DNA of 64,000 bases from Macrostomum lignano (lineage: Eukaryota), in the NCBI GenBank assembly GCA_002269645.1, contig NIVC01000909.1, positions 118,258-182,257 of the forward strand. The letters are read 5' to 3'. Of this stretch, positions 22,027 through 53,898 are shown in pieces. Position 1 is the first letter of the stretch, and every line of letters begins with the position of its first letter. The position numbers and the translations under genes are program-made. The notes beneath the pieces were generated by a model. It was not told the origin of the DNA and did not search any database. It worked only from the letters and a program-made list of their open reading frames with translations.

Positions 22027-22611
22027 CTAGAAATAATTCAATGCTTTTGCGTCCAACTGACAGGAATCTTCTGTCTCGTCCTCTCAACTGCGTCAATCTG
22101 GTTTAGCCTCACTAAGGGAATTTATACTCATTTTTATTATCTAAGTAGAAGTCGACTGTTATTGGTTGTTCCATGGAAGAATTTTCGTTTTTCTTCGTTT
22201 TTGACGATTCTAACAATGCACTACTTGCAGACAGTAGTATAGTAGCATTCTGAGAATGTTTTAAAGCGTCTAGAAAAAAAATTGTCAGAAAATAAAACAT
22301 AAAGTAAGTGATTGCCCTGTGCTGCACTAACCTCAAAATACAAGCTAGAAACTCAAGTGAGTAATTAGTGAAGGAAAATATTAGGACTCACCGACAGTGT
22401 TAGATTGCGACAACATAAATAACAGATTTATCAATACTCGCTATATACAACAGCAGCGGTGTTAGACTTAGCCAAACTGGCAGCTCTTGTGCAGCTATCG
22501 AGGCATCAGACACCCGATGCACTAGCTGCTAAAGCTGCCACTCCAGGGCAAGGGACTCGGACAGGGGGATAGTAAGAAGGGACTTGAGACTTCTTTCTCG
22601 ACTCTCTGTAC

Positions 22612-25600
22612 CTATAGAGTATCCTCAGGTGACGTAGTCTCTGCTCCAGCTGAAGTCTCCCAGTCGAGGCTGTCAGTCGAACTAACCATCCCTGGGCCAG
22701 GCTCCGGTACCACCCGGACCTTGTCGGTGCTCATTGAGTAGCCTAGAGTCCAGCCGCCACCGCCGCTGCTGCCATCGCCGCCTGCTGTCGAGGACGCCTC
22801 CGCATCGATGCTATCGACACTGCGGGTCATGGCCAGCTGGGCCTCCTCGGTGAGTGAGTCGGCCTCACTCGGTGCGCACACAGACGACGCCATCGACGAC
22901 TCCATCACCGGGGCAATCTTTTTCGACCGGCCGGGCGGGAATCGCCTCTGAGCTACGGCGGCCGCGACCGGCTCTTCGTCCTCCTCGTCCTCTTCACCAA
23001 GACTATCGGCGTCTTTACCAGCGTCCGCTTCCTCGAACCGAACCTCTGGCACTTTCAGCGCTTCAGCAATCTTAGACGCTTCGGAATAGATCTGACTGTC
23101 GGCCTGGTCTGGTTCGACAGAATCCTCTTCATCATCTTGTTGAATGTCCTCGTCAACTTCTTCGACATCCTCCATTACCGACTCTGCAGGCTCCTCCGCT
23201 GTCTCCAGCTCCCGCTCGAGCCGCTCAAACTCGGTCAGCGAGCCCGATGCCGCGTCTTCTTGCGGTGCGGCGATCATCTCGAAGTCGGATTCGCCCGAAT
23301 CGACAGGCGAGTTAGACTTCTGCTGCGCACTCGGCCTGTAAGATTCTTCGCTTTTGTCGACCTGCTTCTGTTGAAGCATCTCCGGAAAACGGTCCGATTT
23401 TTTCGAGCCAAACGAGGAGGAAAGTCCAGCTGCTGTTGGCGTCTCATCTTCTTCAGTAAGTGGCGGCTCGATTTCGAAGCCGATTTTTGGTGGAGACTTG
23501 GCCACTTGTAGCTGCTGCTGCATTGACGGCTGGAGATGCTTCTCCGGCTGCGGTTGTTGCTGTTGTCGTTGTTGTTGAGACAAGCGCTGCTCTGGAGAGC
23601 TCTCCGGTGTTTCCTTTAACTCCATGATTGGCGACAGAAGATTGTCATCGATGACCACCTGTTCAACAGCCTTATTCGTCATAAAAACGTACGCGGCTTT
23701 GGGAGAAGCGCCGAGTGGTTCTTCGCCCTCGTCATCATCCTCGTCGTCTTCTTCATCTGATTCTTCAGCGTAGTCGTCTCCTTCCTGATACACAGCTCCC
23801 TGGAACAGCTCCGAGTCGATGTCGCCAACCGAGGTCCGAAAGCCTTCGTGTTCTTGGCTCTCGGCATTCTCATCTTCAACGTCATCCTTTTCGCCTTGCT
23901 TCATCATTATCTGTTCGGCAGCCTTTTCGAAATCCAACGCTAGTTCTTCCTCTTGTAGCGAGCGCTCCAGTCTCTCCTGTGCTGTGCGCTCGAATTCCTC
24001 CGACTTGACGGCATCCGCAGCGGAGCTCAAAGCACGAGAAGCCAACTGACGAGCCGCTTCGTCGCTCTGATCCGACGGCACCTCCAATTCCTCGAACGCC
24101 TCACCAGACATTGTAGGGCTTATTGGTCCACCCGATGTGGTTGATGAAGATAGGGTTGAACGTTGTTGTGCTTCTTCTAAAAGTACTCCTGCATCATCCG
24201 CATCGGCCGTCTCTTCCTCACATTCTGAGTTCTGCACCGTATCGTCGTCCTGTCCAGCTAGCGTGGAGGCAACGTCACTAACCAGAGAAGTTGACACATC
24301 CGTTGCGTCATCAAATTGTCTGCGAGCAACTTCCGTTTCTTCTTCAGCTTCTCCGCCGCTCTCGAAGTCAATATCTGAAGCGGCGTCATCTCGAGTTAGC
24401 AGTATAAAGCCGCTGTCATCTTGTCCTACAATGCTGGGAATGTCATCAGCAGTTGCCGAAGGGCCAAACCGGTTGTCGGTTACACTGATGCCGGAGCTAA
24501 GAACTTCGCTAGACTTAGAGGCGTCCTGGCTAAGCGAAGACGCGTCCCGTGGCAGTTCGGAGGAATGAGCCATTGGCGGCTGGCTGGTCTCGGAGTCCTC
24601 AAGCGTAACCACAGACGCTTCCATGGTTCCAGTGTCTAGGCGTTGCGCTTCCAACTGGCCCTCCGGATCCTCCAACTGAAACTGGCACTCGTCAGGCGAA
24701 GCGGAGTTGGTGCCGCTCATCGCAGAAGTGCCCCTAGCCAGTCCAGGAGAGACAGGACTCGTCCCAACCGACTCGTCCAGGTTTCTGGGCTCCTCCGCCG
24801 TTGACGCCGCCAGGCTGAGATTGGCCAGCGCCGGCAGAGACCGCTTGATGACGGAATCAAATGATTCAGGACTCTGAGCGGATTCGCCAGGAATCTCCTC
24901 GTCGTATTCTGGCAGCTCGCTCGGGCCAGCAGAAACCGCAGGGTTAACAATAGCAGAAGCAGCCTCATCAGACTGCTCAACAAGTATAAAGGCGTCCGGA
25001 CCGAGTAGAATACGAGCCTCAGGCTCAGCGACAGCTGGTTTAGTTTGGTGACGAAAAATATTCTGGTCCGATTGTGGTACAGCAGCTTCTTCATCACTTG
25101 CTGCCTCATGTTCCTGTTGTAGCGAGCCTTCACGACCCGCTGGTCTTTCGTCATCCTCGCCTTCGGCATCAAAATCATCTTCGAAACGGGCGTCGCTGCC
25201 TGGTTCGCTCTCGTTAGAATACAGCATTTCTTCTTCATCCTCGACGACTCGGGCCTCATCTTCGTCCAGCTGCTCAGACTGAAGAGACTCTGAAAGTTTA
25301 TGACCCTCTTCGCCTTCCTTACGAGTAGGAGAGGTACTCTGCATTTGTGAGGGTGAACCTGCTTCAGCCTTTCGTCCATCATCTGCAAGCTCATCAGCCT
25401 CGATGGACTCAACAGGCAGCTCTTCAGTCTCTCTGTACTCAACAGGCTGCTCTTCAGTCTCCGTGTAATCAACAGACTGCTCTTCAGTTTCTTTGTACTC
25501 AACAGGCTGCTCTTCAGTTTCTTTGTACTCAACAGGCTGCTCTTCAGTTTCTTTGTACTCAACAGGCTGCTCTTCAGTCTTTCTGTAGTCCACAGGCTTC

Positions 25601-28600
25601 TCTTCGGAGTCTTGGTAGTCAACACGCTGCTCCTCAGATTCTTTGTACTCCACTGACTGTTCCTCAGGGTCCTTGTACTCGTATTCAACTGGTAGCTCCC
25701 CCGGAGAAAGTTGAGACGCGATAAACTGGGACTCTGTGTCGCGTAAATCGTTACCCGTCGATACAAAAGTGTCCATACCGCTTGATATCCTTAGTTGAAC
25801 GGCCAGCACTAATGTTTCAGTTCTAGCAACACTGCATGTAGGTTCAGTCATATTGGGAAGAGGCTCTGTTTCCTGCTTTGTCACAGCTTCCTCGGGCTCT
25901 TTAAGCGGCTGTGGCTCAGTGTCCTTGTGCTCAACCGAAAGAATCTCAGCTTCCCCGGGCTCTTGAAGCGGCTGTGGCTCAGTGTCCTTGTGCTCAACCG
26001 AAAGAATCTCGGGTTCCTCGGGCTCTTGCACTGTACGTGACTCAGTGTCCTTGTGCTCAACCGAAAGAATCTCAGCTTCCTCGGGCTCTTGAAGCGGCTG
26101 TGACTCAGTGTCCTTGTGCTCAACCGAAAGAATCACAGCTTCCTGGGGCTCTTGAATCGCGTCCTTGTGCTCAACTAGAAGGGTTTCAGCTTCCTCGGGC
26201 TCTTGAACCGAATCTGTCTCAGTGCCCTCGTGCTCAACTGAATGTCTAACGCCCGAAAGGCTCTTTAAAGCGGCGATCAAAGCTTTTTGAACACAATCTC
26301 TCGCACAGGCGTCAATTAGTGAGTCATCGGTTTTCTGATCTGAGTCCAAGTCATCTGATTGAGCAGTACCTTGCTCCACACCTTTTAATTTTACTTCGTT
26401 AAGTTCTGCAACATTCTGCTCTTCATTTGATGGCTCATCACCCTTTTCTTCCTTATGCTCGGACATATCCGAAGTTTTTGCATCGTGAATCACAATTTCT
26501 GAAACTTTTTCAAGCGAAGACGCTGCTTCAGAGTTTTCAAGAATTTCCTCACTTTCTGTTTGTTCCTCAGCATCCTTATGAGCATCTGTTGTTTTTAGCT
26601 GTTCCTCTACATTATCATGAGAAGCAGCAGACTGCGGCCGTTCTCCAACTCCAGAGAGAACTGCTGTATCGGTCTCCTTATCTGAAGCCTGTAAGTCAGT
26701 ACCTTCTTCATCAGTAAACTGTGAACCAGTGGATCGGAGTATCAATTGAACAGGTAATGATTGACACTCCGTCTCAGTGATTTCAAAAATGCAAGGCTTC
26801 TCAACGGACTCAACAGTGCGAGGCTCCTCCTGTGACTCGGGCTCAAGGGACTCAACCGTGCGAGGCTCCTCCTGTGGCTCGGTCTCAATAGACTCAACAG
26901 TGCAAGGCTCCTCCTGTGGCTCGGGCTCAACAGACTCAACAGTGCGAGGCTCCTCCTGTGGCTCCGGCTCAAGGGACTCAACAGTGCGAGGCTCCTCATG
27001 TGGCTCGGGCTCAAGGGACTCAACAGTGCGAGGCTCCTCCTGTGGCTCGGTCTCGACGGACTCAACAGTGCGAGGCTCCTCCTGTGGCTCCGGCTCAAGG
27101 GACTCAACAGTGCGAGGCTCCTCCTGTGGCTCGGTCTCAAGGGACTCAACCGTGCGAGGCTCCTCCTGTGGCTCGGTCTCGACGGACTCAACAGTGCGAG
27201 GCTCCTCCTGTGGCTCGGTCTCGACGGACTCAACAGTGCGAGGCTCCTCCTGTGGCTCGGGCTCAAGGGACTCAACAGTGCGAGGCTCCTCCTGTGGCTC
27301 GGTCTCGACGGACTCAACAGTGCAAGGCTCCTCCTGTGGCTCCGGCTCAAGGGACTCAACAGTGCGAGGCTCCTCCTGTGGCTCGGTCTCAAGGGACTCA
27401 ACCGTGCGAGGCTCCTCCTGTGGCTCGGGCTCAAGGGACTCAACCGTGCGAGGCTCCTCCTGTGACTCGGGCTCGGTCTCGACGGACTCAGCAGTGCGAG
27501 GCTCCTCTTGTGGCTCGGTCTCAACAGAGCGAGGCTCTTTCTGTGTGGTACCATTTTGCTCGAAAATACCTCTGAATCTGGACTCTTCAGCACGTAACGC
27601 CGTTTCAATTGCGTCATTCACCAGCTTTTTTACCAAATCAAACTCAAAATTTTCTACTTTATACGTCACTTCATCTTTGTTTTGAATGCCATCCGATGTG
27701 TCTTCTTCTGGTAGGTTTTGTTTGATAAATACTTCTGGGTCATTTTTGCTGGGAACGAATTCTGGTCCAGTGGCTCTGTCTGAAGCAACAATATCCTTGT
27801 CAGTAACTGCTTCAAGGTCACTTGGCTGACGTAACTCCACAGGAAGAACTTGTGTTCCAGTCAGTACAGATGTCTTCAGTAAGTCTTCAGGAACTTCAGG
27901 CTCTTCTGGCTCAGCAAGCGCTTCAGTCTCCTCAGGCTCGGCACGAGCTTTAGTCTCTTCTGGTTCAGCACGAGCTTCGGCCGCTTCTGGCTCAGCAAGA
28001 GCTTCAGTCTCTTCTGGCTCAGCACGAGCTTCAGTCTCTTCAGGCTCAGCACAAGCTTCAGTTTCTTGAGGCTCAGCACGAGCTTCAGTTTCTTCTGGCT
28101 CAGCACGAGCTTCAGTTTCTTGAGGCTCAGCACGAGCTTCAGTTTCTTCAGGCTCAGCACGAGCTTCAGTCTCTTCTGGCTCAGCACGAGCTTCAGTCTC
28201 TTCAGGCTCAGCACGAGCTTCAGTTTCTTGAGGCTCAGCACGAGCTTCAGTTTCTTCTGGCTCAGCACGAGCTTCAGTTTCTTGAGGCTCAGCACGAGCT
28301 TCAGTTTCTTCAGGCTCATCACGAGCTTCAGTCTCTTCTGGCTCAGCACGAGCTTCAGTTTCTTGAGGCTCAGCACGAGCTTCAGTTTCTTCAGGCTCAT
28401 CACGAGCTTCAGTTTCTTCAGGCTCATCACGAGCTTCAGTCTCTTCTTGCTCAGCACGAGCTTCAGTCTCTTCTGGCTCAGCGCGAGCTTCAGTCTCCTC
28501 AGGCTCAGCACGAGCTTCAGTCTCCTCAGGCTCTGCATGAGCTTCAGTCTCCTCTCTTTCATCACGGGGTTCAGTTTCATTCTCACTCGGAACGAACTTT

Positions 28601-31600
28601 GATCCAGTGGTTCTATCTGACACGACAATGTCCTTGTTGGCAATGGCTTCAGTCAGCTCATCTGGTTGACGCAATTGTACAGCAAGAACTTGGGTCTCAG
28701 TGAGTGCAGATGTCTGCTCAGGAGCAATTGTAGCTGATGTCTCCGCAGGATCAGTTGGTGTCTTCTCAGACTGAATTGTACCTGGTGTTTCATCTAGTTC
28801 TGCACGAGCTTCAGGCTCTTGAGGCTCAGCACGAGCTTTAGTCTCTTGAGGCTCAGCACGAGCTTCAGTCTCTTCAGGCTCAGCACGTGATTTAGTGTCT
28901 TCTGGCTCAGCGCGAGCTTCAGGCTCCTCAGGCTCATCACGAGCTTCAGTCTCTTGAGGCTCAGCACGAGCTTCAGTCTCCTCTGGCTCAGCACGAGCTT
29001 CACTCTCTTCTGGCTCAGCGCGAGCTTCAGTCTCTTCAGGCGCAGCACGAGCTTCAGTCTCCTCAGGCTCAGAATGAGCTTCAGTATCTTCAGGCTCAGC
29101 ACGAGCTTCAGTCTCATGAGGCTCAGCACGAGCTTCAGTCTCCTCTGGCTCTGCATGAGCTTCAGTCTCCTCTGGCTCTGCATGAGCTTCAGTCTCCTCA
29201 GGCTCAGAAATAGCTTCAGTCTCTTTTGGCTGAGCACCAGCTTCAGTCTCTTGAGGCTCAGCACGAGCTTCAGTCTCTTCTGGCTCAGCGCGAGCTTCAG
29301 TCTCTTCAGGCTCAGCACGAGCTTCAGTCTCCTCAGGCTCGGCACGAGTATCCGCCTCTTCTGGCTCTTCAGTATCTTCAGGCTCCGCACGAGCTTCAGT
29401 CTCCTCAGGCTCAGCACGAGCTTCGGTCTCTTCTGGCTCAGCACGAGCTTCAGTCTCTTCTGGCTCAGCACGAGCTTCGGTCTCTTCAGGCTCATCACGA
29501 TTTTCAGTCTCCTCAGGCTCTGCATGAGCTTCAGTCTCTTGAGGCTTAGCACGAGCTTCAGTCTCCTCAGGCTCAGCACGAGCTTCAGTCTTCTCAGGCT
29601 CAGCACGAGCTTCAGTCTCCTCAGGCTCTGCATGAGCTTCAGTCTCCTCTCTTTCATCACGGGCTTCAGTTTCATTCTCACTCGGAACGAACTGTGATCC
29701 AGTGGTTCTATCTGACACGACAATGTCCTTGTTGGCAATGGCTTCAGTCAGCTCATCTGGTCGACGCAATTGTACAGCAAGAACTTGGGTCTCAGTGAGT
29801 GCAGATGTCTGCTCAGGAGCAATTGTAGCTGATGTCTCCGCAGGATCAGTTGGTGTCTTCTCAGACTGAATTGTACCTGGTGTTTCATCTAGTTCTACAC
29901 GAGCTTCAGGCTCTTGAGGCTCAGCACGAGCTTTAGTCTCTTGAGGCTCAGCACGAGCTTCGGTCTCCTCAGACTCACCACGAGCTTCATTCTTTTGAGG
30001 CTTAGCACGAGCTTCAGTCTCCTCAGGCTCAGCACGAGCTTCAGTCTCCTCAGGCTCTGCACGAGCTTCAGTCTCCTCAGGCTCAGCACGAGCTTCGGTC
30101 TCCTCAGGCTCAGCACGAGCTTCAGTCTCTTCAGGCTCAGCACGAGCTTCAGTTTCTTGAGGCTCAGCACGAGCTTCAGTTTCTTCTGGCTCAGCACCAG
30201 CTTCAGTTTCTTGAGGCTCAGCACGAGCTTCAGTTTCTTCAGGCTCATCACGAGCTTCAGTCTCTTCTGGCTCAGCACCAGCTTCAGTCTCTTCAGGCTC
30301 ATCACGATTTTCAGTCTCCTCAGGCTCTGCATGAGCTTCAGTCTCTTGAGGCTTAGCACGAGCTTCAGTCTCCTCAGGCTCAGCACGAGCTTCAGTCTTC
30401 TCAGGCTCAGCACGAGCTTCAGTCTCCTCAGGCTCTGCATGAGCTTCAGTCTCCTCTCTTTCATCACGGGCTTCAGTTTCATTCTCACTCGGAACGAACT
30501 TTGATCCAGTGGTTCTATCTGACACGACAATGTCCTTGTTGGCAATGGCTTCAGTCAGCTCATCTGGTTGACGCAATTGTACAGCAAGAACTTGGGTCTC
30601 AGTGAGTGCAGATGTCTGCTCAGGAGCAATTGTAGCTGATGTCTCCGCAGGATCAGTTGGTGTCTTCTCAGACTGAATTGTACCTGGTGTTTCATCTAGT
30701 TCTACACGAGCTTCAGGCTCTTGAGGCTCAGCACGAGCTTTAGTCTCTTGAGGCTCAGCACGAGCTTCGGTCTCTTCAGGCTCAGCACGAGATTTAGTGT
30801 CTTCTGGCTCAGCGCGAGCTTCAGGCTCCTCAGGCTCATCACGAGCTTCAGTCTCCTCAGGCTCAGCACGAGCTTCGGTCTCTTGAGGCTTAGCACGAGC
30901 TTCAGTCTCCTCAGGCTCTGCACGAGCTTCAGTCTCCTCAGGCTCAGCACGAGCTTCAGTCTCCTCAGACTCACCACGAGCTTCATTCTCTTGAGGCTTA
31001 GCACGAGCTTCAGTCTCCTCAGGCTCAGCACGAGCTTCAGTCTCCTCAGGCTCTGCACGAGCTTCAGTCTCCTCAGGCTCAGCACGAGCTTCGGTCTCCT
31101 CAGGCTCAGCACGAGCTTCAGTCTCTTCAGGCTCAGCACGAGCTTCAGTTTCTTGAGGCTCAGCACGAGCTTCAGTTTCTTCTGGCTCAGCACCAGCTTC
31201 AGTTTCTTGAGGCTCAGCACGAGCTTCAGTTTCTTCAGGCTCATCACGAGCTTCAGTCTCTTCTGGCTCAGCACCAGCTTCAGTCTCTTGAGGCTCATCA
31301 CGAGCTTCAGTCTCTTCTTGCTCAGCACGAGCTTCGGTCTCTTCAGGCTCAGCACGAGCTTCAGTCTCGTCAGGCTCATCACGAGCTTCAGTCTCTTCTG
31401 GCTCAGCGCGAGCTTCAGTCTCTTCAGTCTCAGCACGAGCTTCAGTCTCCTCAGGTTCAGCACGAGCTTCGGTCTCTTCTGGCTCAGCGCGAGCTTCAGT
31501 CTCTTCTGGTTCAGCACGAGCTTCGGTCTCTTCAGGCTCATCACGATCTTCAGTCTCCTCAGGCTCTGCATGAGCTTCAGTCTCTTGAGGCTCATCACGA

Positions 31601-34600
31601 GCTTCAGTCTCTTCTTGCTCAGCACGAGCTTCGGTCTCTTCAGGCTCAGCACGAGCTTCAGTCTCGTCAGGCTCATCACGAGCTTCAGTCTCTTCTGGCT
31701 CAGCGCGAGCTTCAGTCTCTTCTGGCTCAGCACGAGCTTCAGTCTCTTCTGGCTCAGCACGATCTTCGGTCTCTTCAGGCTCATCACGATTTTCAGTCTC
31801 CTCAGGCACTGCATGAGCTTCAATCTCTTGAGGCTTAGCACGAGCTTCAGTCTCCTCAGGCTCAGCACGAGCTTCAGTCTTCTCAGGCTCAGCACGAGCT
31901 TCAGTCTCCTCTCTTTCATCACGGGCTTCAGTTTCATTCTCACTCGGAACGAACTTTGATCCAGTGGTTCTATCTGACACGACAATGTCCTTGTTGGCAA
32001 TGGCTTCAGTCAGCTCATCTGGTTGACGCAATTGTACAGCAAGAACTTGGGTCTCAGTGAGTGCAGATGTCTTCTCAGGAGCAATTGTAGCTGATGTCTC
32101 CGCAGGATCAGTTGGTGTCTTCTCAGACTGAATTGTACCTGGTGTTTCATCTAGTTCTACACGAGCTTCAGGCTCTTGAGGCTCAGCACGAGCTTTAGTC
32201 TCTTGAGGCTCAGCACGAGCTTCGGTCTCTTCAGGCTCAGCACGAGATTTAGTGTCTTCTGGCTCAGCGCGAGCTTCAGGCTCCTCAGGCTCATCACGAG
32301 CTTCAGTCTCCTCAGGCTCATCATGAGCTTCAGTCTCTTGAGGCTTAGCACGAGCTTCAGTCTCCTCAGGCTCAGCACGAGCTTCAGGCTCTTTTGGCTC
32401 AGCGCGAGCTTCAGTCTCTTCAGGCTCAGCACGAGCTTCAGTCTCTTCTTGCTCAGCACGAGCTTCAATCTCTTGAGGCTCAGCACGAGCTTCGGTCTCT
32501 TCAGGCTCAGCACGAGCTTCAATCTCTTGAGGCTTAGCACGAGCTTCAGTCTCTTCTGGCTCAGCACGAGCTTCAGGCTCTTGAGGCTTAGCACGAGCTT
32601 CAGTCTCCTCAGGCTCAGCACGAGCTTCAGTCTCCTCAGGCTCTGCATGAGCTTCAGTCTCCTCAGGCTCTGCACGAGCTTCAGTCTCCTCAGGCTTAGC
32701 ACGAGCTTCAGTCTCCTCAGGCTCACCACGAGCTTCAGTCTCTTGAGGCTCATCACGAGCTTCAGTCTCCTCAGGCTCAGCACGAGCTTCAGTCTCCTCA
32801 GGCTCTTCACGAGCTTCAGTCTCCTCAGGCTCAGCACGAGCTTCAGTCTCCTCAGGCTCTTCACGAGCTTCAGTCTCCTCAGGCTCAGCACGAGCTTCAG
32901 TCTCCTCAGGCTCTGCATGAGCTTCAGTCTCTTGAGGCTTAGCACGAGCTTCAGTCTCCTCAGGCTCAGCAAGAGCTTCAGTCTCCTCAGGCTCTTCATG
33001 AGCTTCAGTCTCCTCAGGCTCTGCACGATCTTCAGTCTCTTCTTGCTCAGCACGAGCTTCAGTCTTCTCAGGCTCAGCACGAGCTTCAGTCTCCTCAGGC
33101 TCTGCATGAGCTTCAGTCTCCTCTCTTTCATCACGGGGTTCAGTTTCATTCTCACTCGGAACGAACTGTGATCCAGTGGTTCTATCTGACACGACAATGT
33201 CCTTGTTGGCAATGGCTTCAGTCAGCTCATCTGGTTGACGCAATTGTACAGCAAGAACTTGGGTCTCAGTGAGTGCAGATGTCTGCTCAGGAGCAATTGT
33301 AGCTGATGTCTCCGCAGGATCAGTTGGTGTCTTCTCAGACTGAATTGTACCTGGTGTTTCATCTAGTTCTACACGAGCTTCAGGCTCTTGAGGCTCAGCA
33401 CGAGCTTTAGTCTCTTGAGGCTCAGCACGAGCTTCGGTCTCTTCAGGCTCAGCACGAGATTTAGTGTATTCTGGCTCAGCGCGAGCTTCAGGCTCCTCAG
33501 GCTCATCACGAGCTTCAGTCTCCTCAGGCTCATCATGAGCTTCAGTCTCTTGAGGCTTAGCACGAGCTTCAGTCTCCTCAGGCTCAGCACGAGCTTCAGG
33601 CTCTTTTGGCTCAGCGCGAGCTTCAGTCCCCTCAGGCTCAGCACGAGCTTCAGTCTCTTCTTGCTCAGCACGAGCTTCAATCTCTTGAGGCTCAGCACGA
33701 GCTTCAGGCTCTTCTAGCTCAGCACGAGCTTCAGTCTCCTCAGGCTCAGCACGAGCTTCGGTCTCTTGAGGCTTAGCACGAGCTTCAGGCTCTTGAGGCT
33801 CAGCACGAGATTTAGTGTATTCAGGCTCAGCACGAGCTTCAGTCTCTTGAGGCTTAGCACGAGCTTCAGTCTCCTCAGGCTCTGCATGAGCTTCAGTCTC
33901 TTGAGGCTTAGCATGAGCTTTAGTCTCCTCAGGCTCAGCACGAGCTTCAGTCTCCTCAGGCTCTGCATGAGCTTCAGTCTCCTCAGGCTCAGCACGAGCT
34001 TCAGTCTCCTCAGGCTTAGCACGAGCTTCAGTCTCCTCAGGCTCACCACGAGCTTCAGTCTCTTGAGGCTTAGCACGAGCTTCAGTCTCCTCAGGCTCAG
34101 CACGAGCTTCAGTCTCCTCAGGCTCTTCACGAGCTTCAGTCTCCTCAGGCTCAGCACGAGCTTCAGTCTCCTCAGGCTCTGCATGAGCTTCAGTCTCTTG
34201 AGGCTTAGCACGAGCTTCAGTCTCCTCAGGCTCAGCAAGAGCTTCAGTCTCCTCAGGCTCTTCATGAGCTTCAGTCTCCTCAGGCTCTGCGCGATCTTCA
34301 GTCTCTTCTTGCTCAGCACGAGCTTCAATCTCTTGAGGCTTAGCACGAGCTTCAGTCTCCTCAGGCTCTGCATGAGCTTCAGTCTCTTGAGGCTCACCAC
34401 GAGCTTCAGTCTCCTCAGGCTCAGCAGGAGCTTGGGTCTCCTCACGCTCAGCGAAATGTTCGTACTCCGCAGAACCAGAGAGTGTATCTTTATGCTTATG
34501 TAATTTCACAGCTAGAACTTGCGTCTCGGTTTCTATGGCGACACCTTCAGCCTCTTCCTCTGGCACAGCAGCCTCGGGTTCGCTCAGCTGCCGACTCCAA

Positions 34601-35576
34601 TCAGGTTCCAGACGATCCGGAGACTTTGAGGCTGCTGTTGTAGTTGACACCAGCATGCTGTCAGGTATGACGCGATCAATCTCAAGGCCAACCTGTTCAA
34701 TATCTTCGTCAATACCAGTGTAGCGGTTGACAATGACGCACTCTGCCTCAGCCATCAGCTCTTCGGCTCGTTGTAGTCTGGCATCGAATGCCGAATTTTC
34801 ATCCTCTTGAGATGGGGCAGGCTGAGGTGACTGCTCCGGCGCAGCAGGTTGCTGGTGCTGAGGAGGAAACTTCTTGTAAGCGTCCACTGGACTCTGCACT
34901 GGACTGTCCAGCTTCTCCTCCATCCTACGGTAGGTGTATTCAGAGGATACAAGCGCCGAGAAACGACGTCCGGGCTCTGCAGTTTCTTCTTTCGTGGGTG
35001 ACACGAGCTCCTCCGGCCGGATGCCGCCGGAGTGAAACAGGCTGGATGACTGGAGCTGCGGCTCCGTCCAGCTTCGCCCGGCAGCCTCATCGTCGTCTTC
35101 TTCTTCTGTGGCTGAAGCGTAGGAAGACGACTGCGCTGAGGGGAGCTCTCGGGCTTTTTCAAACGCTTCCTCAAGTGCCTCCTGACTAGAGAATTCGGCG
35201 GCTGCTGAGGCGGCTGTGTTGGCAGATTCAAAGCTTGGAGCAACATCCTGCACCGGGGTGGCCATCTCGGAGTCGACCGTTTCCATCGGCGATATCGGCC
35301 TTGACATTTCCTCGCTGATTGACTTCTCTTCAACCTGCGGCGTTGCGTCCGGCGCGTTTAGCGCTTCATCAATACTCAGACTGCGCATCTCCGAACGGAG
35401 ACTGTCCTCGTGCTCCATCGCGCGAATCATTAACGAGTTCAAAGAGCGTCGGCGTTCGGCATCGGTAGCAGCATCGGATGAATCGGCGTCGACTTTGGCA
35501 GGCTCGATGTTGGCAGCGGCAGCTTTGGCTGGCGTGAGCGGCAAGCTGGCTGGCGGAGTTGGACGCTTCTGACCGG
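22612..35576 (-). CDS. ank2: Giant exon of ankyrin (12,965 nt, about 4,320 aa, highly acidic and repetitive)
   Basis: Uninterrupted ORF. The only phase-1 acceptor near its start is ttcaatctgcag|cc at 35576, which matches the upstream donor at 36110. Ends in TAG at 22612. Confidence 0.88.
25400..25690 (-). repeat. Coding 30-bp repeat (EEQPVEYKET), about 9 copies
   Basis: Seen in the giant-exon translation and the DNA. Confidence 0.9.
25880..26200 (-). repeat. Coding 63-bp repeat (QEPEEAEILSVEHKDTESQPL), about 5 copies
   Basis: Seen in the giant-exon translation and the DNA. Confidence 0.9.
26800..27540 (-). repeat. Coding 42-bp repeat (EPQEEPRTVESLE[T/P]), about 17 copies
   Basis: Seen in the giant-exon translation and the DNA. 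Confidence 0.92.
27895..34430 (-). repeat. Coding 27-bp repeat (EPEETEARA) in six blocks, separated by five near-identical ~249-bp modules
   Basis: Modules ELDETPGTIQ...RDERE at about 33369, 32157, 30702, 29895 and 28800. Confidence 0.95.
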
Positions 35577-36109: not shown

Positions 36110-36643
36110 CTCCTCCTTCTCCTGATCCATCGTTTCCTCTGCGCCGCTGCATCCGCAACGACAGCCTCTGTTGCAGCCGCCTTCGCTGCCTTTCAGTGTC
36201 GGAACTGTACAGCGGATAACTTTCGATGTCGTCTTCAATGAACTGGGAGGCGCTGGACACGGTTCTCCTTGCACTGGCCGCTGCGCCAGCGGTGGAATGA
36301 TCGCCCAGTGAGTCAAAGCTAGTAGTTGTGTCCGTGGTGGTCAGGGTGGCATCCTCTGGGCCGGACTCGGACACGAGAGAGCGGCGGTACCTGTCCAAGC
36401 TGCCAACTGTGCCGTGGTGACCGGCTATGGCTGTTACTTCGGTCAGATCCGGCGTGTAAGAAGACGAGATGTCGGACATTGTTGACGCCTCCAAGGAGGA
36501 GGTGTCGATTCCAGGCGTGGACGAGTGCGACAGCTGCTTCTTGTGATGTCGCTCAGAGTCTGGTGTTGTCCAACTACCCGAGTCCCACTGCTGCGGCTGC
36601 TGCGGCTGCTTTTGCCTCAGCTCAATATTTGAGCTGGTCTGGC
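36110..36643 (-). CDS. ank2: Ankyrin C-terminal-region exon (178 codons, phase 1-1)
   Basis: Acceptor tttttctag|gc, frame GQTSSNIELR...GSGEGG, donor g|gttagc. Confidence 0.7.
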
Positions 36644-37311
36644 CTAGAAAAATAATTCTCCACTATAAAAAATGAATATTAACGTTTCTATTGTAAAACA
36701 TTTTTTCTTAAAAGTATCAGACACACAGGCAGGCGCACGAAGTCTAGCAGAGCCCTAACTGCCTGAGTCCTACCTCCGCAGGCGTTTGCAACATCGTCTT
36801 CAATTTCCAATGCCTGTTGCTCAAACGATGCATCTCGAAAAAGCTTATCTGCAATGAAAAAAATTGAGTTAAAAAATCGTTGATCCATGGCAACCATCTG
36901 GTATTTAATATATTACGTTTTTAACAAGAATAGGCCTACTCACCATAAGATAGTTCGTGCTCAAGATAGTACAAAATAACTGCAGTGCGAGGAGGTGCTG
37001 CTGACAACAGTTAATTGTAGAGTGCTAGCTAAGTAAAATTATTCGCTTCGCACCTCTGGTTTAGGCTGCGACGTTTTGTGCTTTCAAAATTACGAAAATA
37101 TGATTATTCGAGCATAAACTAAAGCCAGGCGAGTCAGGCACTCAGAATAATCAGTCATTACTTTTGTCTCTATGAAACAACAATAAAACAGTAAAAGTGC
37201 TTAGGAAAACTTGTCAGTTGTTGTTGCTACACAACGTAAATTAAGGTGCGCGAGTATCGTCAAATATAAGGAAAAATTCAGCGTAAAAGAATTATGCTTG
37301 ATTAGACTTAC

Positions 37312-37377
37312 CTGACTTTGGCACTGCTGCAGGTAGGGCAGTATGACTGACCGCCACTGATTTCGGAACTTCGACCA
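37312..37377 (-). CDS. ank2: Ankyrin small exon (22 codons, phase 1-1)
   Basis: cgtattttag|tg...tcag|gtaagt, reads VVEVPKSVAVSHTALPAAVPKS. Confidence 0.6.
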
Positions 37378-37487
37378 CTAAAATACGGGAAAGAATTGAA
37401 TCGCGTTTATCCTTAACCCAAGTTCCTGGGTGGCATAGCCCGTACCATTCATGCAAAATCATTTATTGAAGCGCAAATTTTATTTAC

Positions 37488-37640
37488 CATCTTCTGGCGG
37501 CTCAGCCTCCGGAGCCATGGATTGATCCGGTAGAGAGTCTAATTTTGACAGCAGCTCTTCCACCTGAGTCGGACTGCTTGCTTCCCCCGATTCCACCTGT
37601 TTTCGGGCTTTGGCCGAGATCGCTTCCTCTTCGATAGGCT
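37488..37640 (-). CDS. ank2: Ankyrin exon (51 codons, phase 1-1)
   Basis: aaccacag|ag...gatg|gtaaat, reads EPIEEEAISAKARKQ...EAEPPED. Confidence 0.6.
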
Positions 37641-38017: not shown

Positions 38018-39002
38018 CTGCGTCCTTCCAGTCCCGATCATGTGAGTTAATCAAGGACTCCGGATCTGGGAGCATCTGATCCAGCGACTCAAGCAGTCCA
38101 ACGTAGGCGTCGATCTTCACGCGACGAGCTGCCTCCGCTTCCTCGGCGGTCGGCGCCGACTTTGGTTTCGGCCGTGTCTCGTCCAGCTGAGGCACCACGT
38201 CGGCCTCGTGCACCTCGACAGCCGTTTTTGAATCGTCTTTACCGTCGAGCAGCGCTCGCGCCTGCTCGTGCTCCTTTGGCTCTGTAACGTACTGCACGTT
38301 GCGCATGCACTGCTTCACTACGTCATCTCGTCCAATGCGTCGCAGAGCGGCCTCGAGCGCGTTGCCGGTTGCCTCACCACTGGGCTCTTTGATTCGGCGC
38401 CATCGACGCAGCATTGACATGGCGCGCTCTCGATCATCTGGCCGATTAGCAGCTATTTCAGCGATGTCCGAGTCGGTCAGGCCGAGCTCTTGAGCTGCCA
38501 GAGACCAGTCTGAGCGCAGCTTCTCCGCCACGTCGCGAATGTCCAGCTCAGCTCGAGCGATGGTGTCGCTGGTGAGACGCAACGGTTCCGGCGTAGTTTC
38601 TCTCGACGACGGATCGGAGAGTCTCTGGGGCTGCTGCCGGTCTGACTGCGGCGGCGTCGGCATCGGCGGCCCATCGTATTCGGGCAGTGCCAACTCGACA
38701 CTGCAGGCGCTGCCCGATGCCGGCTCCAGGACGAGTCGTCCAACGGCCGGTCGGTCGGGCTGACTTACGCGGACCTGGCAGGACAGGCGGTTCTCGCGGA
38801 ACGGCCGGACTGTCATTGTTAGCGATTGACGCTGCTGCTGCTCCGACTGCTGTTGCTTCTCCAGTGTTGCTTCGTGGTCAGCAATGACTGTCAGATTTCC
38901 TGGCGCATCCGTCACCCAGCGTTTTCGACCGTCGAGTACCTCAAATTCGGCAGATTCTGCTTTGCGTTCGTAGCCTTCCGCGCATTCCAGGGTTTTATCC
39001 AG
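38018..39002 (-). CDS. ank2: Ankyrin exon: rest of the UPA domain plus the death domain
   Basis: ccaccttcag|ctg LDKTLE...EFEVLDG, MTVRPFRENRL. Death domain DIRDVAEKLRSDW...GNALEAALRRIGRDDVV at about 38305-38570. Donor gcag|gtgagt. Confidence 0.88.
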
Positions 39003-39386: not shown

Positions 39387-40443
39387 CTTATCGTCAGTGA
39401 CGCAAAGGCAACGCAACATTGCACCGTCCGGTCGATTTCGTTTAGCGTAGACAACAAATCGTCCGATGTAGGGCACCGGCAGGCAATCTCGGTAAATTCT
39501 AGTCGCCAGCGAGACTGCATCCGTGCCGTTTGGACAGTCCAACAGCCAGAACCTGGCGCTGACTGTTGTAGTGAAAGACACGCACTCCTTGACTCGGGAC
39601 AACGGCGTCGAACCCGTGATGTCTTCCCAGGCGGCTACCTGAGCTCCGCCAGTGATGCTGCACATGAGGCGCAGCGTCCAATTATCGGTCTGGCCTGACG
39701 GTCTCGGTGGCACCGGGATCGTCAGCGTGATCGGCTTGTGAAACTTTCGACGCCTCGGCTCGATGGTGACAATAGGCGAAGCTGACACCACCTGGGCAAG
39801 CTGTGCGGCTGTCTCCAATGGAATCGGCATCACCTGGATTGCGACGCGAATCTTTTTAGTCAATGCGCCGTCTGGAAATATGGCCTGCACCTGACGGCTG
39901 ACACCAGTGGAGGTGATGGCGCCGCCTTCGGGACCGATCAGAGCCGTCTCTTGGCGAGGTCGAGTCACCAAGGCGAAGTACTGAGGCATGCTAGTGGTCA
40001 GGATTCTGATTATTCGCTTCTCTCGCAGCTCTTCGGACGTCTCCAAAGGTCCAGGAAGGCCACTGAGTGCGTCCAGCACCGCAGCAGAGTCCTGGCCGCC
40101 AGCTTCCGTTGGGTGCTCCTTCCAGACGTCGCCAGTCTCCGAGCGGTAGACCACAACCTCGCGTTCACCGTTTCTCAGCGCGGCAATGTGCGGCACCTCC
40201 AGCACAATCGGCGATCGGAACGTGCCGTCGACACCGCCTCCGCCGAGCTCGAGGATGCGGCTGGCGAGGCCCTCGCCGTCGCAGAGCTGCGGCGGGCTGG
40301 TCAGGCGGTCGGGCCGTAGCAGGCGGCAGGTGAGGCGCAGCGGCTCGCCAGCGGCTTTCGGCGGCACCACGACGCGCAGGCCGGGGCAGCGCGCTCCGGT
40401 CATGGCACCGCCGCGCGCGTCCACGATGAAGGACACGAGGAAG
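39387..40443 (-). CDS. ank2: Ankyrin exon: ZU5-ZU5 and start of UPA (spectrin-binding region)
   Basis: FLVSFIVDARGG, GEGLASRILE, SPIVTIEPRRRKFHKPITLTIP, SFTTTVSARFWL. Acceptor ccacag|c (phase 2), donor aag|gttagt. Confidence 0.92.
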
Positions 40444-41658: not shown

Positions 41659-41766
41659 ACAGCTGTATTTTTCTGTTGAGCATGCTCACGATGCTCTTCA
41701 GCAAGTGCAGGTTGCTGCTGTTGCTGCTGTTGCTGCTGCTGAGCGCAAAGCCCAGAACTCGTGGAA
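41659..41766 (-). CDS. ank2: Ankyrin linker exon, poly-Q (108 nt, phase 2-2)
   Basis: cttctgcaag|t...gt|gtgagt, reads SSTSSGLCAQQQQQQQQQQPALAEEH. Confidence 0.55.
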
Positions 41767-45475: not shown

Positions 45476-45518
<43 letters not shown>

Positions 45519-46747: not shown

Positions 46748-46899
46748 CTGGTCAGCACAGGCATCTGGTCGCTTGGCGTCTCCTGCTGCTGCTGAAGCAG
46801 CAATAGTTTCGGCTCCAGCTGCTGAATATTTGGCACGGGAACTGAAGCAGCCGCCGTAGCCGCTGACTGCTTCTGGCACTCGGGTTCCGGCACTGCAGC
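46748..46899 (-). CDS. ank2: Ankyrin linker exon (152 nt, phase 0-2)
   Basis: caaaacag|gct...ccag|gtgagt, reads AAVPEPECQKQ...QQQQETPSDQMPVLT. Confidence 0.6.
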
Positions 46900-49490: not shown

Positions 49491-49674
49491 CAGTTTCATC
49501 GTCTGACTCGGAAATCACGGTGGCTAAATCCTCCGATATGGCGGATTCTGGAGCCCTGTCAGCGTCGTCTTTGACTTCGGCTTGCCACGCTGAAGAAGTT
49601 GTGAGCGGCTTCAGCAGCTCAAATATCTCAACTTGATTGGTTTGATTTGCTAAGTGTGCCGGTGTCAGGTTTTG
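49491..49674 (-). CDS. ank2: Ankyrin exon: last ANK repeat and start of linker
   Basis: tttccag|caa QNLTPAHLA...PESAISEDLATVISESDDET g|gtaaat. Resembles the conserved PE..SDDEG linker start. Confidence 0.75.
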
Positions 49675-50933: not shown

Positions 50934-51536
50934 CGCATTCCGACAGTCAGCTGTAACACCTGGCTGATCCAGCAGCAGCCGAACAACTTCAATGTGGCCC
51001 TCCCTGGCGGCCAGGTGCAACGGTGTCTGACCGCTAGAGCCTCCAGTGCACTGCGGCTTGGCTCCAGCCTTCAGTAGGGACGCCACGGCGTCTGCATGAC
51101 CTCGACGTGCGGCCGCGTGCAGAGGTGTCCAGCCGCCTTCAACTCCGATGTCGCTGTTGCCGCTGACGCTGGTGGTGGCGGTGCTGCTGCTGCTGCTGAA
51201 GCAATTCGGGTTGGCTCCAGCTGAGAGCAGAGCCTGCAGCGCTTGGAGACGGTTGCCGTTGGCGGCCAGGTGCAGCGGCGTCACGCCGCGACCGCCGACG
51301 CAGTTCAGATCAGCTCCGGCCTCCACGAGCTGCCGGGTCACAACCGCTTGATCGCTTCGAGCCGCCAGGTGAAGCGGCGTCGCGCCCTTTCGAGTCACCG
51401 GCTGCAGCCGAGCGGCCGGCCACTCCTGCTGCTGCGAGTTCAACAGGATTCGAATCACGGCGTCATGCCCTTCGCGGGCGGCAAAGTGCAAACCGGTGTA
51501 GCCGTCGCGACAGGCCGCGTCGGGATTCGCTCCCGC
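50934..51536 (-). CDS. ank2: Ankyrin exon: five ANK repeats with insertions (201 codons)
   Basis: cccacag|gcg...gcg|gtgagc, GYTGLHFAAREGH, GATPLHLAA, GVTPLHLAA, GWTPLHAAA, GQTPLHLAAREGH. Confidence 0.88.
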
Positions 51537-53421: not shown

Positions 53422-53898
53422 CTGATGATTGGGATCGCAGTCGGATGTGAGCAGCAATCCTGCACTGCGTACGTCGTCCTTCTTCGCGGCCACGTGCAGC
53501 GCCGGCATCCGCGACCGGCAGCGAGTGTCCGTCTCCAGGAGCACCGCGACCACTTTGTCGTGTCCCTGTTGAAGCGCCACCGCTAACGGAGTGAATCCGT
53601 CGGTTGTAGCCAGACTCTGCGACGCACCCGACGCTATCAGGTGTCGAACAACTTCCAGATGATTCTCCTGAGCGGCCATGTAGAGCGGTGAGAAGCCCGC
53701 CTGCGACTGGCAGTTCACTTTGGCACCCCGTTCGATCAGCAATTTCACAACTTCGAGCTGGCCTGCAAGCGATGCGATGTGCAACGCGCTGTTGCCTTTC
53801 TTGGTGCGAGCGTCCGGGTCTGCGCCTCTGGATAATAGCTCCTGTACCACCGCCGTGTGGCCTTCCTTGCTGGCCAGGTGCAGAGCGTTGAGTCCATT
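53422..53898 (-). CDS. ank2: Ankyrin exon: ANK repeats 2-6 (159 codons)
   Basis: cgcacag|aat [14 protein letters not shown]...[18 protein letters not shown]...cag|gtgagt. These are diagnostic canonical-ankyrin repeats. Confidence 0.93.

What the first reader, a model, noticed from the sequence alone, without database searches (positions are those of the whole stretch)
22612..35576. A 13-kb single exon makes this a giant ankyrin, with the exon after the death domain
Seen: 14 hand-spliced exons total 18,348 nt in frame (6,115 aa plus stop, before a first exon). The order is ANK-ZU5-ZU5-UPA-DD-giant exon, and the DAR spectrin-binding motif is intact. Established: vertebrate AnkG/AnkB giant exons precede the death domain, while fly Ank2-L/XL and worm UNC-44 long regions follow it, and giant ankyrins organise axons and the axon initial segment. 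Inference: if this genome is lophotrochozoan, it is an informative and probably uncharacterised giant ankyrin.
Basis: partly seen in the sequence, partly recalled or inferred. Interest (0 to 1): 0.75.

Follow-up and report, generated by a model that had tools for sequence, protein, structure and literature searches.

The report
Flatworm giant ankyrin with 13-kb exon
The window holds a giant ankyrin gene of the flatworm Macrostomum lignano whose last exon is a 13-kb open reading frame placed after the death domain, which is the arrangement already known from other protostomes, so it is a real and tidy but largely expected find.

Summary
On the minus strand, an uninterrupted 12,965-nt exon runs from the acceptor at 35576 to the stop codon at 22612-22614. 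It lies downstream of exons that encode ANK repeats, ZU5-ZU5-UPA with an intact DAR motif, and a death domain. All junctions I could place use GT-AG and keep the frame.

The source is Macrostomum lignano (Platyhelminthes, Lophotrochozoa). UniProt A0A1I8GX06, a 1,167-aa fragment, is reproduced exactly by the window and already joins the death-domain exon to the giant ORF.

A paralogous locus carries a GenBank model built from a transcriptome assembly (PAA50710.1). That model links 24 ANK repeats and ZU5-ZU5-UPA to a terminal long exon. Its non-repeat flanks are collinear with, and homologous to, those of this exon (E 4e-35 and 7e-47).

Half of the exon is a 27-nt array of about 244 copies encoding EPEETEARA. 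The tail is 32% acidic and has no Pfam domain.

A long exon after the death domain is the published protostome and echinoderm pattern (Jegla 2016), but that survey included no flatworm. I therefore rate this a new member of a known kind.

This copy has 21 ANK repeats, not 24.

The parts
57453..57554 (-). Exon A: start of ANK repeat 1 (SDPSQNFLRVARAGTLEKVLDYLECGTRIDTSNA). The ATG-bearing first exon lies further upstream and was not identified.
   Evidence: Acceptor CAG|TCGGAC and donor GCT|GTGAGT. 74% identical to residues 14-40 of paralog PAA50710.1.
53422..53898 (-). Exon B: ANK repeats 2-6.
   Evidence: Pfam Ank/Ank_2. GT-AG sites, phase 0.
52083..52958 (-). Exon C: ANK repeats 7-15.
   Evidence: Pfam Ank_2 E 2.6e-84. 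Splice sites.
50934..51536 (-). Exon D: ANK repeats 16-18, a Ser-rich insert (51135-51203) where repeat 19 should be, then two more repeats.
   Evidence: Pfam. Alignment to the 24-repeat paralog and to vertebrate ankyrins.
49491..49674 (-). Exon E: last ANK repeat (equivalent to repeat 24) and start of the linker. The donor ACTG|GTAAAT leaves phase 1.
   Evidence: The paralog exon ends at the same place (VMSESDDEAG versus VISESDDETG).
46748..46899 (-). Candidate linker exon L1 (unverified).
   Evidence: Best coding-potential segment in the E-F interval. Acceptor ACAG|GCTGCA, donor CAG|GTGAGT. In frame in the 12-exon model.
41659..41738 (-). Candidate linker exon L2 (unverified). It ends in phase 2, as the ZU5 exon requires.
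   Evidence: Acceptor CTCAG|CAGCAG, donor GCTGT|GTGAGT.
39387..40443 (-). Exon F: ZU5N (DAR motif at 40413-40421), ZU5C and the start of UPA.
   Evidence: Pfam ZU5 E 2e-31 and UPA_2. 50-64% identical to ankyrins of vertebrates, insects, annelids and flatworms. DAR located.
38018..39002 (-). Exon G: rest of UPA, death domain (about 38307-38540) and a C-terminal segment. The donor GCAG|GTGAGT leaves phase 1.
   Evidence: Pfam Death E 3.4e-13 and UPA_2. Splice sites.
37488..37640 (-). Exon H: phase 1/1 cassette exon. It is present in A0A1I8GX06 and conserved in the paralog.
   Evidence: tblastn to L002 gives E 1.8e-5. Collinear alignment.
37312..37377 (-). Exon x: phase 1/1 cassette exon (VVEVPKSVAVSHTALPAAVPKS).
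   Evidence: Present in A0A1I8GX06. Acceptor TTTTAG|, donor CAG|GTAAGT. Conserved in the transcript-derived paralog (LSVPRSVAVSHSA).
36727..36848 (-). Exon y: used in A0A1I8GX06. It ends in phase 0 and pairs with the alternative acceptor at 35568.
36110..36643 (-). Exon I: candidate alternative phase 1/1 exon (178 aa). If its donor is read through, the frame stops at once (GGAG|GTTAG), and an AATAAA follows at 36053.
   Evidence: 185-codon open stretch with the best codon-usage score in frame. In frame with J. Absent from every database protein found. Only a weak motif match to the paralog. Poly(A) signal.
22612..35576 (-). Giant terminal exon J: 12,965 nt, 4,321 codons plus stop. An alternative acceptor lies 8 nt downstream at 35568.
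34423..35574 (-). Non-repeat N flank of the giant exon (384 aa), homologous to the start of the paralog's long exon.
   Evidence: 39-50% identity, E 4e-35 and 5e-16. Codon-position GC and codon usage favour the ORF frame.
27894..34452 (-). 27-nt tandem array of about 244 copies (EPEETEARA-type nonamers). It is cut into blocks of 269-485 aa by five spacer modules of about 105 aa that are 98-99% identical to each other.
   Evidence: TRF. Spacer identities. Motif counts.
25389..27524 (-). Three further in-frame arrays: 42 nt x17 (26800-27524), 63 nt x4.3 (25884-26156) and 30 nt x9.7 (25389-25680).
   Evidence: TRF. All periods are multiples of 3.
22615..25431 (-). Non-repeat C flank (939 aa), homologous to the end of the paralog's long exon. 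Both proteins end just after the sequence STDSLD.
   Evidence: 34% identity over 542 columns, E 7e-47. Among 1.84 billion representative proteins the only relatives are two M. lignano proteins.
22133..22138 (-). First AATAAA after the stop codon (474 nt downstream): a candidate poly(A) signal.
   Evidence: consensus match only.

Best explanation
This is one of several ankyrin paralogs of the flatworm Macrostomum lignano, and it can encode a giant isoform of about 5,900-6,100 aa (about 665 kDa, pI about 4.2).

Shown:
- The core is a canonical ankyrin. It has an ANK-repeat membrane-binding domain (21 repeats here), a ZU5-ZU5-UPA spectrin-binding module with the DAR motif, and a death domain.
- After the death-domain exon come small cassette exons (H, x, y and possibly I), mostly phase 1. 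They splice into a 13-kb terminal exon at one of two acceptors 8 nt apart (35576 or 35568).
- The giant exon has two conserved non-repeat flanks around a young, rapidly expanding core of in-frame tandem arrays. The tail is extremely acidic (32% D+E, net charge about -960) and has no recognisable domain.

Inferred from fly Ank2-L/XL, worm UNC-44 and vertebrate giant ankyrins:
- The core anchors membrane proteins to the spectrin skeleton.
- The long tail projects into the axoplasm as an extended polyanionic spacer.
- The conserved flanks are the likely contact sites for microtubules or associated proteins, so that the protein organises axonal cytoskeleton spacing and membrane domains.
- Short isoforms are probably made by ending the transcript before the giant exon, for example at the read-through stop of exon I with AATAAA 57 nt downstream.
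For: Domains and order.

Homology of the core to ankyrins across Bilateria.

Exon ends and frame-preserving GT-AG junctions.

Unique openness of the frame.

Coding signature in the non-repeat parts.

Tandem-array periods: all four arrays inside the exon have periods divisible by 3 (27, 42, 63, 30 nt). The arrays in this gene's introns have periods of 4, 16, 20, 31, 32 and 23/47 nt.

UniProt A0A1I8GX06 joins ZU5-UPA-DD to the giant ORF and is reproduced exactly by the window.

The paralog:
- PAA50710.1 comes from an annotation built from StringTie/TACO transcripts that were cut at experimentally mapped trans-splice and poly(A) sites (PMC5730564).
- It carries 24 ANK repeats and ZU5-ZU5-UPA, followed by exons H' and x' and a terminal long exon.
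- The region across the junction is collinear between the two loci (35% identity, E 2e-31).
- The long-exon flanks are homologous and both proteins stop at the same place.

Composition: S+E 32.9% and S/E/T/D/K/P 58.7%. This fits the published signature of ankyrin long exons, and the position after the death domain is the protostome rule (PMC5135030).
Against: - There is no direct RNA evidence for this locus. I did not establish how the A0A1I8GX06 model was made, and it is a fragment that stops where the repeat array begins.
- This gene's giant region was not found among GenBank proteins.
- The ANK-ZU5 linker exons and exon 1 are unresolved.
- GC3 in the giant exon (0.49-0.55) is lower than in the core exons (0.70).
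- This copy has lost three ANK repeats. In a recently duplicated genome it could therefore be a relaxed or decaying copy.
- Neuronal expression and any microtubule contact are inferred from other phyla. The tail has no detectable homolog outside M. lignano and contains only one small basic patch.
- The length of a 6.6-kb array of 27-nt units may be mis-assembled.
Confidence: 0.8

Rival explanations
1. The giant ORF is a separate gene. It would either be transcribed on its own or be released from a polycistronic precursor by spliced-leader trans-splicing at the 35576/35568 acceptor, starting at an internal ATG (MIRAMEHED...). On this reading it only appears to continue the ankyrin frame.
For: M. 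lignano trans-splices about 39% of its genes, and about 7% of its assembled transcripts are multi-gene precursors (PMC5730564). There is no junction-spanning RNA evidence for this locus. The tail contains no ankyrin-type domain.
Against: Two acceptors 8 nt apart each keep the frame with the upstream exons that fit their phase. The ORF is open from the acceptor itself, about 70 codons before the first ATG. In the paralog, a pipeline that cuts transcripts at mapped trans-splice sites left the ankyrin core and the homologous long exon in one mRNA. Exons H and x, which lead into the long exon, are conserved between the two loci.
Confidence: 0.07
2. The structure is real, but this copy is a redundant duplicate from the recent genome duplication. 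It would be under relaxed constraint or silenced, with an ORF that is still open only because it is young and repeat-rich.
For: The copy has 21 instead of 24 ANK repeats, with repeat 19 replaced by a Ser-rich insert. GC3 and codon-usage score in the tail are lower than in the core. The spacer modules are 98-99% identical, which shows very recent array growth. No GenBank protein for this tail was found. The genome is known to be heavily duplicated.
Against: The two paralogs are only 64% identical in the ANK and ZU5 regions, so the duplication is old. Even so, 2,300 non-repeat codons of the tail remain stop-free, where shuffles expect about 53 stops, and they align to the paralog at 34-50% identity. 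All core motifs, including DAR, are intact. The GenBank submission deliberately dropped transcripts overlapping repeat annotations, which may explain why this gene is absent there.
Confidence: 0.1
3. The exon exists, but its stated size of 13 kb is partly an assembly product. The array of about 244 27-nt units, with its near-identical spacer modules, could be collapsed, expanded or chimeric between duplicated loci.
For: The array spans 6.6 kb. Its five spacers are 98-99% identical and its blocks are of unequal length. The older gene model A0A1I8GX06 breaks off exactly at the start of the array. The genome is 15% simple and tandem repeats and contains duplicated blocks.
Against: There are no Ns and no frame break anywhere in the array, despite 4% indels between units. 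The non-repeat parts alone (about 6.4 kb of the exon) already make it a long exon by published standards, where the mean is 8.1 +/- 4.9 kb.
Confidence: 0.3

Closest known systems
Macrostomum lignano paralog PAA50710.1 (BOX15_Mlig013172g1; locus NIVC01003580.1, fetched as L002)
   Same: Same species and same overall plan. The ANK, ZU5-ZU5-UPA, exon H and exon x equivalents are all present, followed by a terminal long exon whose N and C flanks are collinear and homologous with this one. Both proteins end just after STDSLD. The cores are 64% identical.
   Different: The paralog has 24 ANK repeats against 21 here, and no detectable death domain. Its terminal long exon is 5.5 kb, with an unrelated 15-aa repeat (EEPSQQHLRESPVPT) in place of the 9-aa EPEETEARA array. 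It also has two further long ORFs upstream of that exon which this locus lacks.
Drosophila Ank2-L / Ank2-XL
   Same: A protostome neuronal ankyrin with long exon(s) downstream of the death domain. The XL exon has a large core of tandem repeats that has been proposed to act as a molecular spacer. [quoted passage not shown]
   Different: The tails share no detectable sequence homology. The fly has two long exons and 76-aa repeats. This locus has one long exon, 9-aa repeats and a far more acidic composition. No function has been tested in the flatworm.
C. elegans UNC-44 giant isoform
   Same: An invertebrate ankyrin with a long exon after the death domain, required for axon growth and identity (PMC5135030).
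   Different: No sequence similarity in the tail. UNC-44 is the lone ankyrin gene of the worm, whereas M. lignano has at least three loci with related tails.
Vertebrate giant ankyrin-G (480 kDa) and ankyrin-B (440 kDa)
   Same: The same core architecture, and a single multi-kb exon encoding a low-complexity tail with a similar S/E/T/D/K/P bias.
   Different: The vertebrate exon sits between UPA and the death domain. Here it follows the death domain. Only two loose S/T-x-I/L-P matches were found, and there is no homology.
Mollusc and annelid giant ankyrins surveyed by Jegla et al. 2016 (Lottia, Aplysia, Glossoscolex)
   Same: Lophotrochozoan ankyrins with giant isoforms, and the long exon after the death domain is described as the broad protostome position.
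   Different: No flatworm was included in that survey. I did not compare sequences with these proteins directly.

Membership tests
Canonical ankyrin (ANK1-3 / Ank2 / UNC-44 family) | N-terminal ankyrin-repeat solenoid collinear with the canonical membrane-binding domain | tested here: met
   Pfam Ank and Ank_2 hits in exons B-D. Collinear alignment with vertebrate ankyrins and with the M. lignano paralog; identity to the paralog is 63.8%.
Canonical ankyrin (ANK1-3 / Ank2 / UNC-44 family) | Exactly 24 ANK repeats (the typical number, not strictly required for membership) | tested here: not met
   The model has 21 repeats. Repeat 19 is replaced by a 23-aa Ser-rich insert, and repeats 21-22 are absent relative to the 24-repeat paralog. 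No further ANK-like exon was found by tblastn or in the open stretches. I read this as a derived loss in this copy. A missed exon cannot be fully excluded without cDNA.
Canonical ankyrin (ANK1-3 / Ank2 / UNC-44 family) | ZU5N-ZU5C-UPA supermodule | tested here: met
   Pfam ZU5 (two stretches, E 2e-31) and UPA_2. 50-64% identity to ankyrins over 356 aa.
Canonical ankyrin (ANK1-3 / Ank2 / UNC-44 family) | DAR motif of ZU5N, which the first-stage reader cites as the spectrin-binding motif | tested here: met
   FLVSFIVDARGG, with DAR at 40413-40421. Actual binding was not tested.
Canonical ankyrin (ANK1-3 / Ank2 / UNC-44 family) | Death domain C-terminal to UPA | tested here: met
   Pfam Death E 3.4e-13, 50 bits against a cut-off of 22.6, at about 38307-38540.
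Bilaterian giant ankyrin (long-exon isoforms, Jegla et al. 2016) | One unusually long exon (several kb of unbroken ORF) inside the ankyrin locus | tested here: met
   12,965 nt, with 0 stops in frame against 70-732 in the other frames. The published mean is 8.1 +/- 4.9 kb.
Bilaterian giant ankyrin (long-exon isoforms, Jegla et al. 2016) | Long exon downstream of the death domain (the protostome and echinoderm position) | tested here: met
   The death domain is at about 38307-38540, and the giant exon at 35576-22612 on the same strand. The rule is stated.
Bilaterian giant ankyrin (long-exon isoforms, Jegla et al. 2016) | Composition bias: S+E about 25% and S/E/T/D/K/P above 55% | tested here: met
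   S+E is 32.9% and the six residues together 58.7%. The bias is driven by E (26.6%), with A, P and T next; S is only 6.3%.
Bilaterian giant ankyrin (long-exon isoforms, Jegla et al. 2016) | Long exon contiguous with the ankyrin core in mature mRNA | tested here: inconclusive
   Frame-preserving GT-AG paths exist. UniProt A0A1I8GX06 joins the two parts. A transcript-derived model does so in the paralog. No RNA data for this locus were available to me.
Bilaterian giant ankyrin (long-exon isoforms, Jegla et al. 2016) | Neuron-specific expression and a role in axon organisation | not testable with these tools

The most novel reading that the evidence does not exclude
M. lignano carries at least two anciently diverged giant-ankyrin paralogs. 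Their terminal long exons keep homologous flanks and the same stop position, but their repeat cores are unrelated: a 9-aa EPEETEARA unit in about 244 copies here, and a 15-aa unit in about 16 copies in the paralog. If both are expressed, this would be a within-genome demonstration that ankyrin long exons persist while their cores are replaced by fresh tandem arrays. That is the mechanism proposed, but not shown, to explain why long exons of different phyla share no homology. This copy has lost three ANK repeats and gained a tail with a net charge of about -960, so it would be a neofunctionalised polyanionic tether. It would sit in a flatworm where transgenesis is already available to test the spacer idea by changing the array length.
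Probability: 0.35. Interest if true: 0.5.

Novelty: new member of a known kind. Interest (0 to 1): 0.35.

Why it matters
Giant ankyrins organise axons, and Jegla et al. 2016 argued that they date back to the bilaterian ancestor. That argument rests on finding long exons in every major phylum, and flatworms were not sampled. This locus fills the gap with the expected arrangement: the long exon lies after the death domain.

The more useful by-product is the pair of paralogs. Conserved flanks, a conserved stop position and unrelated repeat cores give a concrete picture of how these exons evolve.

M. lignano has published transgenesis (PMC5730564) and a simple nervous system. The proposed spacer function of the repeat core could therefore be tested there.

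Tried and rejected
1. My secure exons give 17,936 nt. A strict search for four linker exons summing to 412 nt found none. A two-exon linker (L1, L2) gives a clean 18,168-nt CDS, but it is unverified. The paralog's linker exons have no detectable counterpart in the window.

2. Species identification through neighbouring ORFs. The 787-aa ORF at 857-3220 is not on record. The identification came from the junction query instead.

3. The first homology search returned only proteins of 620 aa or less and missed the 100%-identical M. lignano entry. The absence of close relatives there was an artefact of candidate selection, not biology.

4. The search with the ANK region found no M. lignano protein, so it did not help with exon 1 or the linker.

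5. ENA contig L001 (ZU5-UPA 54-64% identical to the window's) shows only ZU5-UPA-DD matches, and no long gene was called in the 3.3 kb after the death domain. It is uninformative.

6. The locus of A0A1I8GX06 in another assembly is not on record.

7. Pfam on the three non-repeat parts of the giant exon and on exon I found nothing.

8. A scan for S/T-x-I/L-P motifs and basic patches as possible microtubule or EB contact sites found two loose motif matches and one basic patch near the C terminus. This is too little to build on.

9. A death domain in the paralog locus was not found, even at E = 5.

10. Ka/Ks between the paralogs was not attempted, because I judged that at 34-50% amino-acid identity synonymous sites would be saturated.


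Full report
**What is there.** The feature lies on the minus strand.
- An ORF of 4,327 codons runs from 35595 to 22612.
It ends with TAG at 22614-22612.
- The coding frame has no stop. The other five frames have 70 to 732 stops.
- In the two non-repeat flanks, base-shuffled controls give on average 14 and 39 stops, and never fewer than 5 and 25.
- The exon contains no Ns.
- In the non-repeat parts, GC at codon position 1 matches that of the ANK exons, and codon usage scores best in the ORF frame. GC3 is lower than in the core exons, 0.49-0.55 against 0.70.

**The rest of the gene.** Pfam finds the following upstream on the same strand:
- Ank repeats in four large exons (53898-53422, 52958-52083, 51536-50934 and 49674-49491), with the start of repeat 1 in a small exon at 57554-57453.
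- Two ZU5 domains and the start of UPA in one exon (40443-39387).
- The rest of UPA and a death domain (E 3.4e-13) in the next exon (39002-38018).

The ZU5 exon begins FLVSFIVDARGG, so the DAR motif is intact (40413-40421). Every junction I placed uses GT-AG, mostly with GTGAGT-type donors. The order ANK, ZU5, ZU5, UPA, DD, giant exon is therefore confirmed.

**Splicing into the giant exon.**
- The death-domain exon G ends in phase 1. Three downstream open segments are phase 1/1 cassettes: H (37640-37488), x (37377-37312) and I (36643-36110). The acceptor at 35576 is also phase 1.
- G-J, G-H-I-J and G-H-x-I-J therefore all read through to the single terminal stop.
- A fourth small exon, y (36848-36727), ends in phase 0 and fits a second acceptor 8 nt further on, at 35568.
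- With two candidate linker exons, a 12-exon model gives 18,168 nt, 6,055 aa, 665 kDa and pI 4.24, not counting the unidentified first exon.
My ten secure exons sum to 17,936 nt. The difference of 412 nt is 1 mod 3, which is what is needed between exon E (donor in phase 1) and the ZU5 exon (acceptor in phase 2).
- That linker is not conserved, even with the paralog, so it cannot be settled from sequence alone.

**Whose genome.** I queried the span from the death domain into the start of the giant exon. It returned one protein, UniProt A0A1I8GX06 of Macrostomum lignano ('Death domain-containing protein', 1,167 aa), at 100% identity. The path F-G-H-x-y-35568 in the window reproduces that entry residue for residue. 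This database model already joins the ankyrin core to the giant ORF. It is a fragment that breaks off where the tandem array starts.

**Independent support from a paralog.**
- A full HMMER scan of 1.84 billion representative proteins with the last 939 aa of the exon found two relatives, both from M. lignano.
- One of them clusters with PAA50710.1 (2,938 aa, partial). This protein has 24 ANK repeats, ZU5-ZU5-UPA and a long tail.
- The GenBank annotation it belongs to was built from StringTie/TACO transcripts. These were cut at experimentally mapped spliced-leader and poly(A) sites (PMC5730564). The core and the tail are therefore in one assembled mRNA.
- At its locus (L002), the last 1,384 aa of the model come from a single ORF of 1,844 codons (34680-40214).
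- That ORF aligns collinearly with the N flank (39-50% identity, E 4e-35) and the C flank (34%, E 7e-47) of the window's giant exon. Both proteins end just after STDSLD.
- Exons H and x have counterparts in the paralog.
- The two loci are only about 64% identical in the ANK and ZU5 regions. The duplication is therefore old, and the conservation of the flanks indicates constraint.
- This is the best available evidence that the giant exon is a genuine terminal coding exon of an ankyrin transcript. It remains indirect for this copy.

**Anatomy of the exon.**
- The exon has a 384-aa non-repeat N flank.
- A 27-nt array of about 244 units follows (27894-34452), encoding EPEETEARA-like nonamers.
- After it come arrays of 42, 63 and 30 nt, and then a 939-aa non-repeat C flank.
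- The 27-nt array is divided into blocks of 269-485 aa by five spacer modules that are 98-99% identical at the DNA level. This shows very recent growth.
- A short motif, TQVLAVQLR, recurs nine times at block starts.
- All four arrays in the exon have periods divisible by three. The arrays in this gene's introns have periods of 4, 16, 20, 31, 32 and 23/47 nt.
- The tail is 26.6% Glu, 13% Ala, 9% Pro and 9% Thr, with a net charge of about -960. S+E is 32.9% and S/E/T/D/K/P is 58.7%. This fits the compositional signature reported for ankyrin long exons.
- It has no Pfam domain and no detectable homolog outside M. lignano. This agrees with the reported rapid turnover of these exons.

**How it probably works.**
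- Shown: a complete spectrin-binding and death-domain core, and a very long, acidic, low-complexity C-terminal extension with conserved ends.
- Inferred from fly Ank2-L/XL, worm UNC-44 and vertebrate giant ankyrins: the ANK repeats hold membrane proteins, ZU5N binds beta-spectrin, and the tail reaches from the membrane skeleton into the axoplasm. There the repeat core would act as an extended spacer, and the conserved flanks would make the specific contacts, most likely with microtubules or their partners.
- Also inferred: short isoforms. Reading through the donors of exons H and I gives an immediate stop. AATAAA overlaps the donor of H (37484) and lies 57 nt after the end of I (36053).

**Comparison with what is known.** Jegla et al. 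2016 found giant ankyrins in tunicates, cephalochordates, echinoderms, molluscs, annelids and arthropods, alongside the already known fly Ank2 and worm UNC-44. They showed that the long exon lies after the death domain in protostomes and echinoderms, and before it in chordates. No flatworm was in that survey, and I found no paper describing a flatworm giant ankyrin. The locus is therefore a new member of a known kind: it confirms the expected arrangement in one more phylum. It departs from the canonical plan in having 21 rather than 24 ANK repeats. Repeat 19 is replaced by a Ser-rich insert, and repeats 21-22 are missing relative to its own paralog.

**Caveats.**
- No RNA evidence for this copy was available.
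- Exon 1 and the ANK-ZU5 linker are unresolved.
- Which of exons x, y and I are used is unknown.
- The length of the 6.6-kb array may not be assembled correctly.
- Function is inferred from distant phyla.

Noticed in passing
window 857-3595 (+): A 787-aa ATG ORF, continued by a further ORF at 3242-3595, is built from about ten 210-nt (70-aa) tandem units that score as ankyrin repeats (Pfam Ank_2 E 4e-51). It is a separate gene, convergent with the giant ankyrin. The exact product is not on record.
   Followed up: partly
window 50934-51536 (-), insert at 51135-51203: This ankyrin copy has 21 ANK repeats, not 24. Repeat 19 is replaced by the insert CFSSSSSTATTSVSGNSDIGVEG, and repeats 21-22 are absent relative to the 24-repeat paralog.
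   Followed up: yes
L002 26625-29255 and 30135-33131 (+): The paralog locus has two more long ORFs (876 and 998 aa), rich in repeats of the type ETSETDIQVCPGVTTELEVT. They lie between its UPA exon and its terminal long exon and are not part of the annotated product PAA50710.1. They may form a second, XL-like long exon.
   Followed up: partly
L002 (whole locus): The paralog has no detectable death domain. PAA50710.1 has no Pfam Death hit, and tblastn with the window's death domain finds nothing even at E = 5.
   Followed up: partly
window 35568-35578 (-): Two acceptors lie 8 nt apart (GCAG|CCGGTCAG|AAG). The first fits upstream exons that end in phase 1, and the second fits exon y, which ends in phase 0. 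Both keep the giant frame.
   Followed up: yes
window 49488-49491, 37484-37488, 36053-36110 (-): The donors of exons E, H and I are each followed at once by an in-frame stop if not spliced (GTAAATAA, GTAAATAA, GTTAG). AATAAA overlaps the donor of H and lies 57 nt after I. These could be the ends of short isoforms.
   Followed up: no
window 25792-34521 (-), nine sites: A short motif (T-Q-V-L-A-V-Q-L-R and variants) recurs at the start of every repeat block of the giant exon, including blocks with different repeat units. Its role is unknown.
   Followed up: partly
window 42548-45613, 46012-46734, 48033-48702, 50113-50812, 54034-54530, 56676-57180, 59470-61472, 61951-63341: The region upstream of the ZU5 exon, made up of the introns and the stretch beyond exon A, is packed with tandem arrays: (TGTC)n of 3 kb and 1.4 kb, (CTAT)n, and units of 16, 20, 31, 32 and 23/47 nt. 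This fits the repeat-rich M. lignano genome. These arrays create long spurious ORFs on both strands.
   Followed up: partly
P0243 (UniProt A0A1I8JMR8): A third M. lignano protein, named 'ELMO domain-containing protein' by its source, carries a tail homologous to the C flank of the giant exon (E 1e-9). It has no Pfam hit in my scan. It is probably a fragment of a third giant-ankyrin locus under a misleading name.
   Followed up: partly
L001 (ENA ERZ25070786, contig ctg99901l): A 7,965-bp contig in an ENA assembly encodes an ankyrin ZU5-UPA ORF (54-64% identical to the window's) followed by a death-domain ORF, from an unidentified animal.
   Followed up: no
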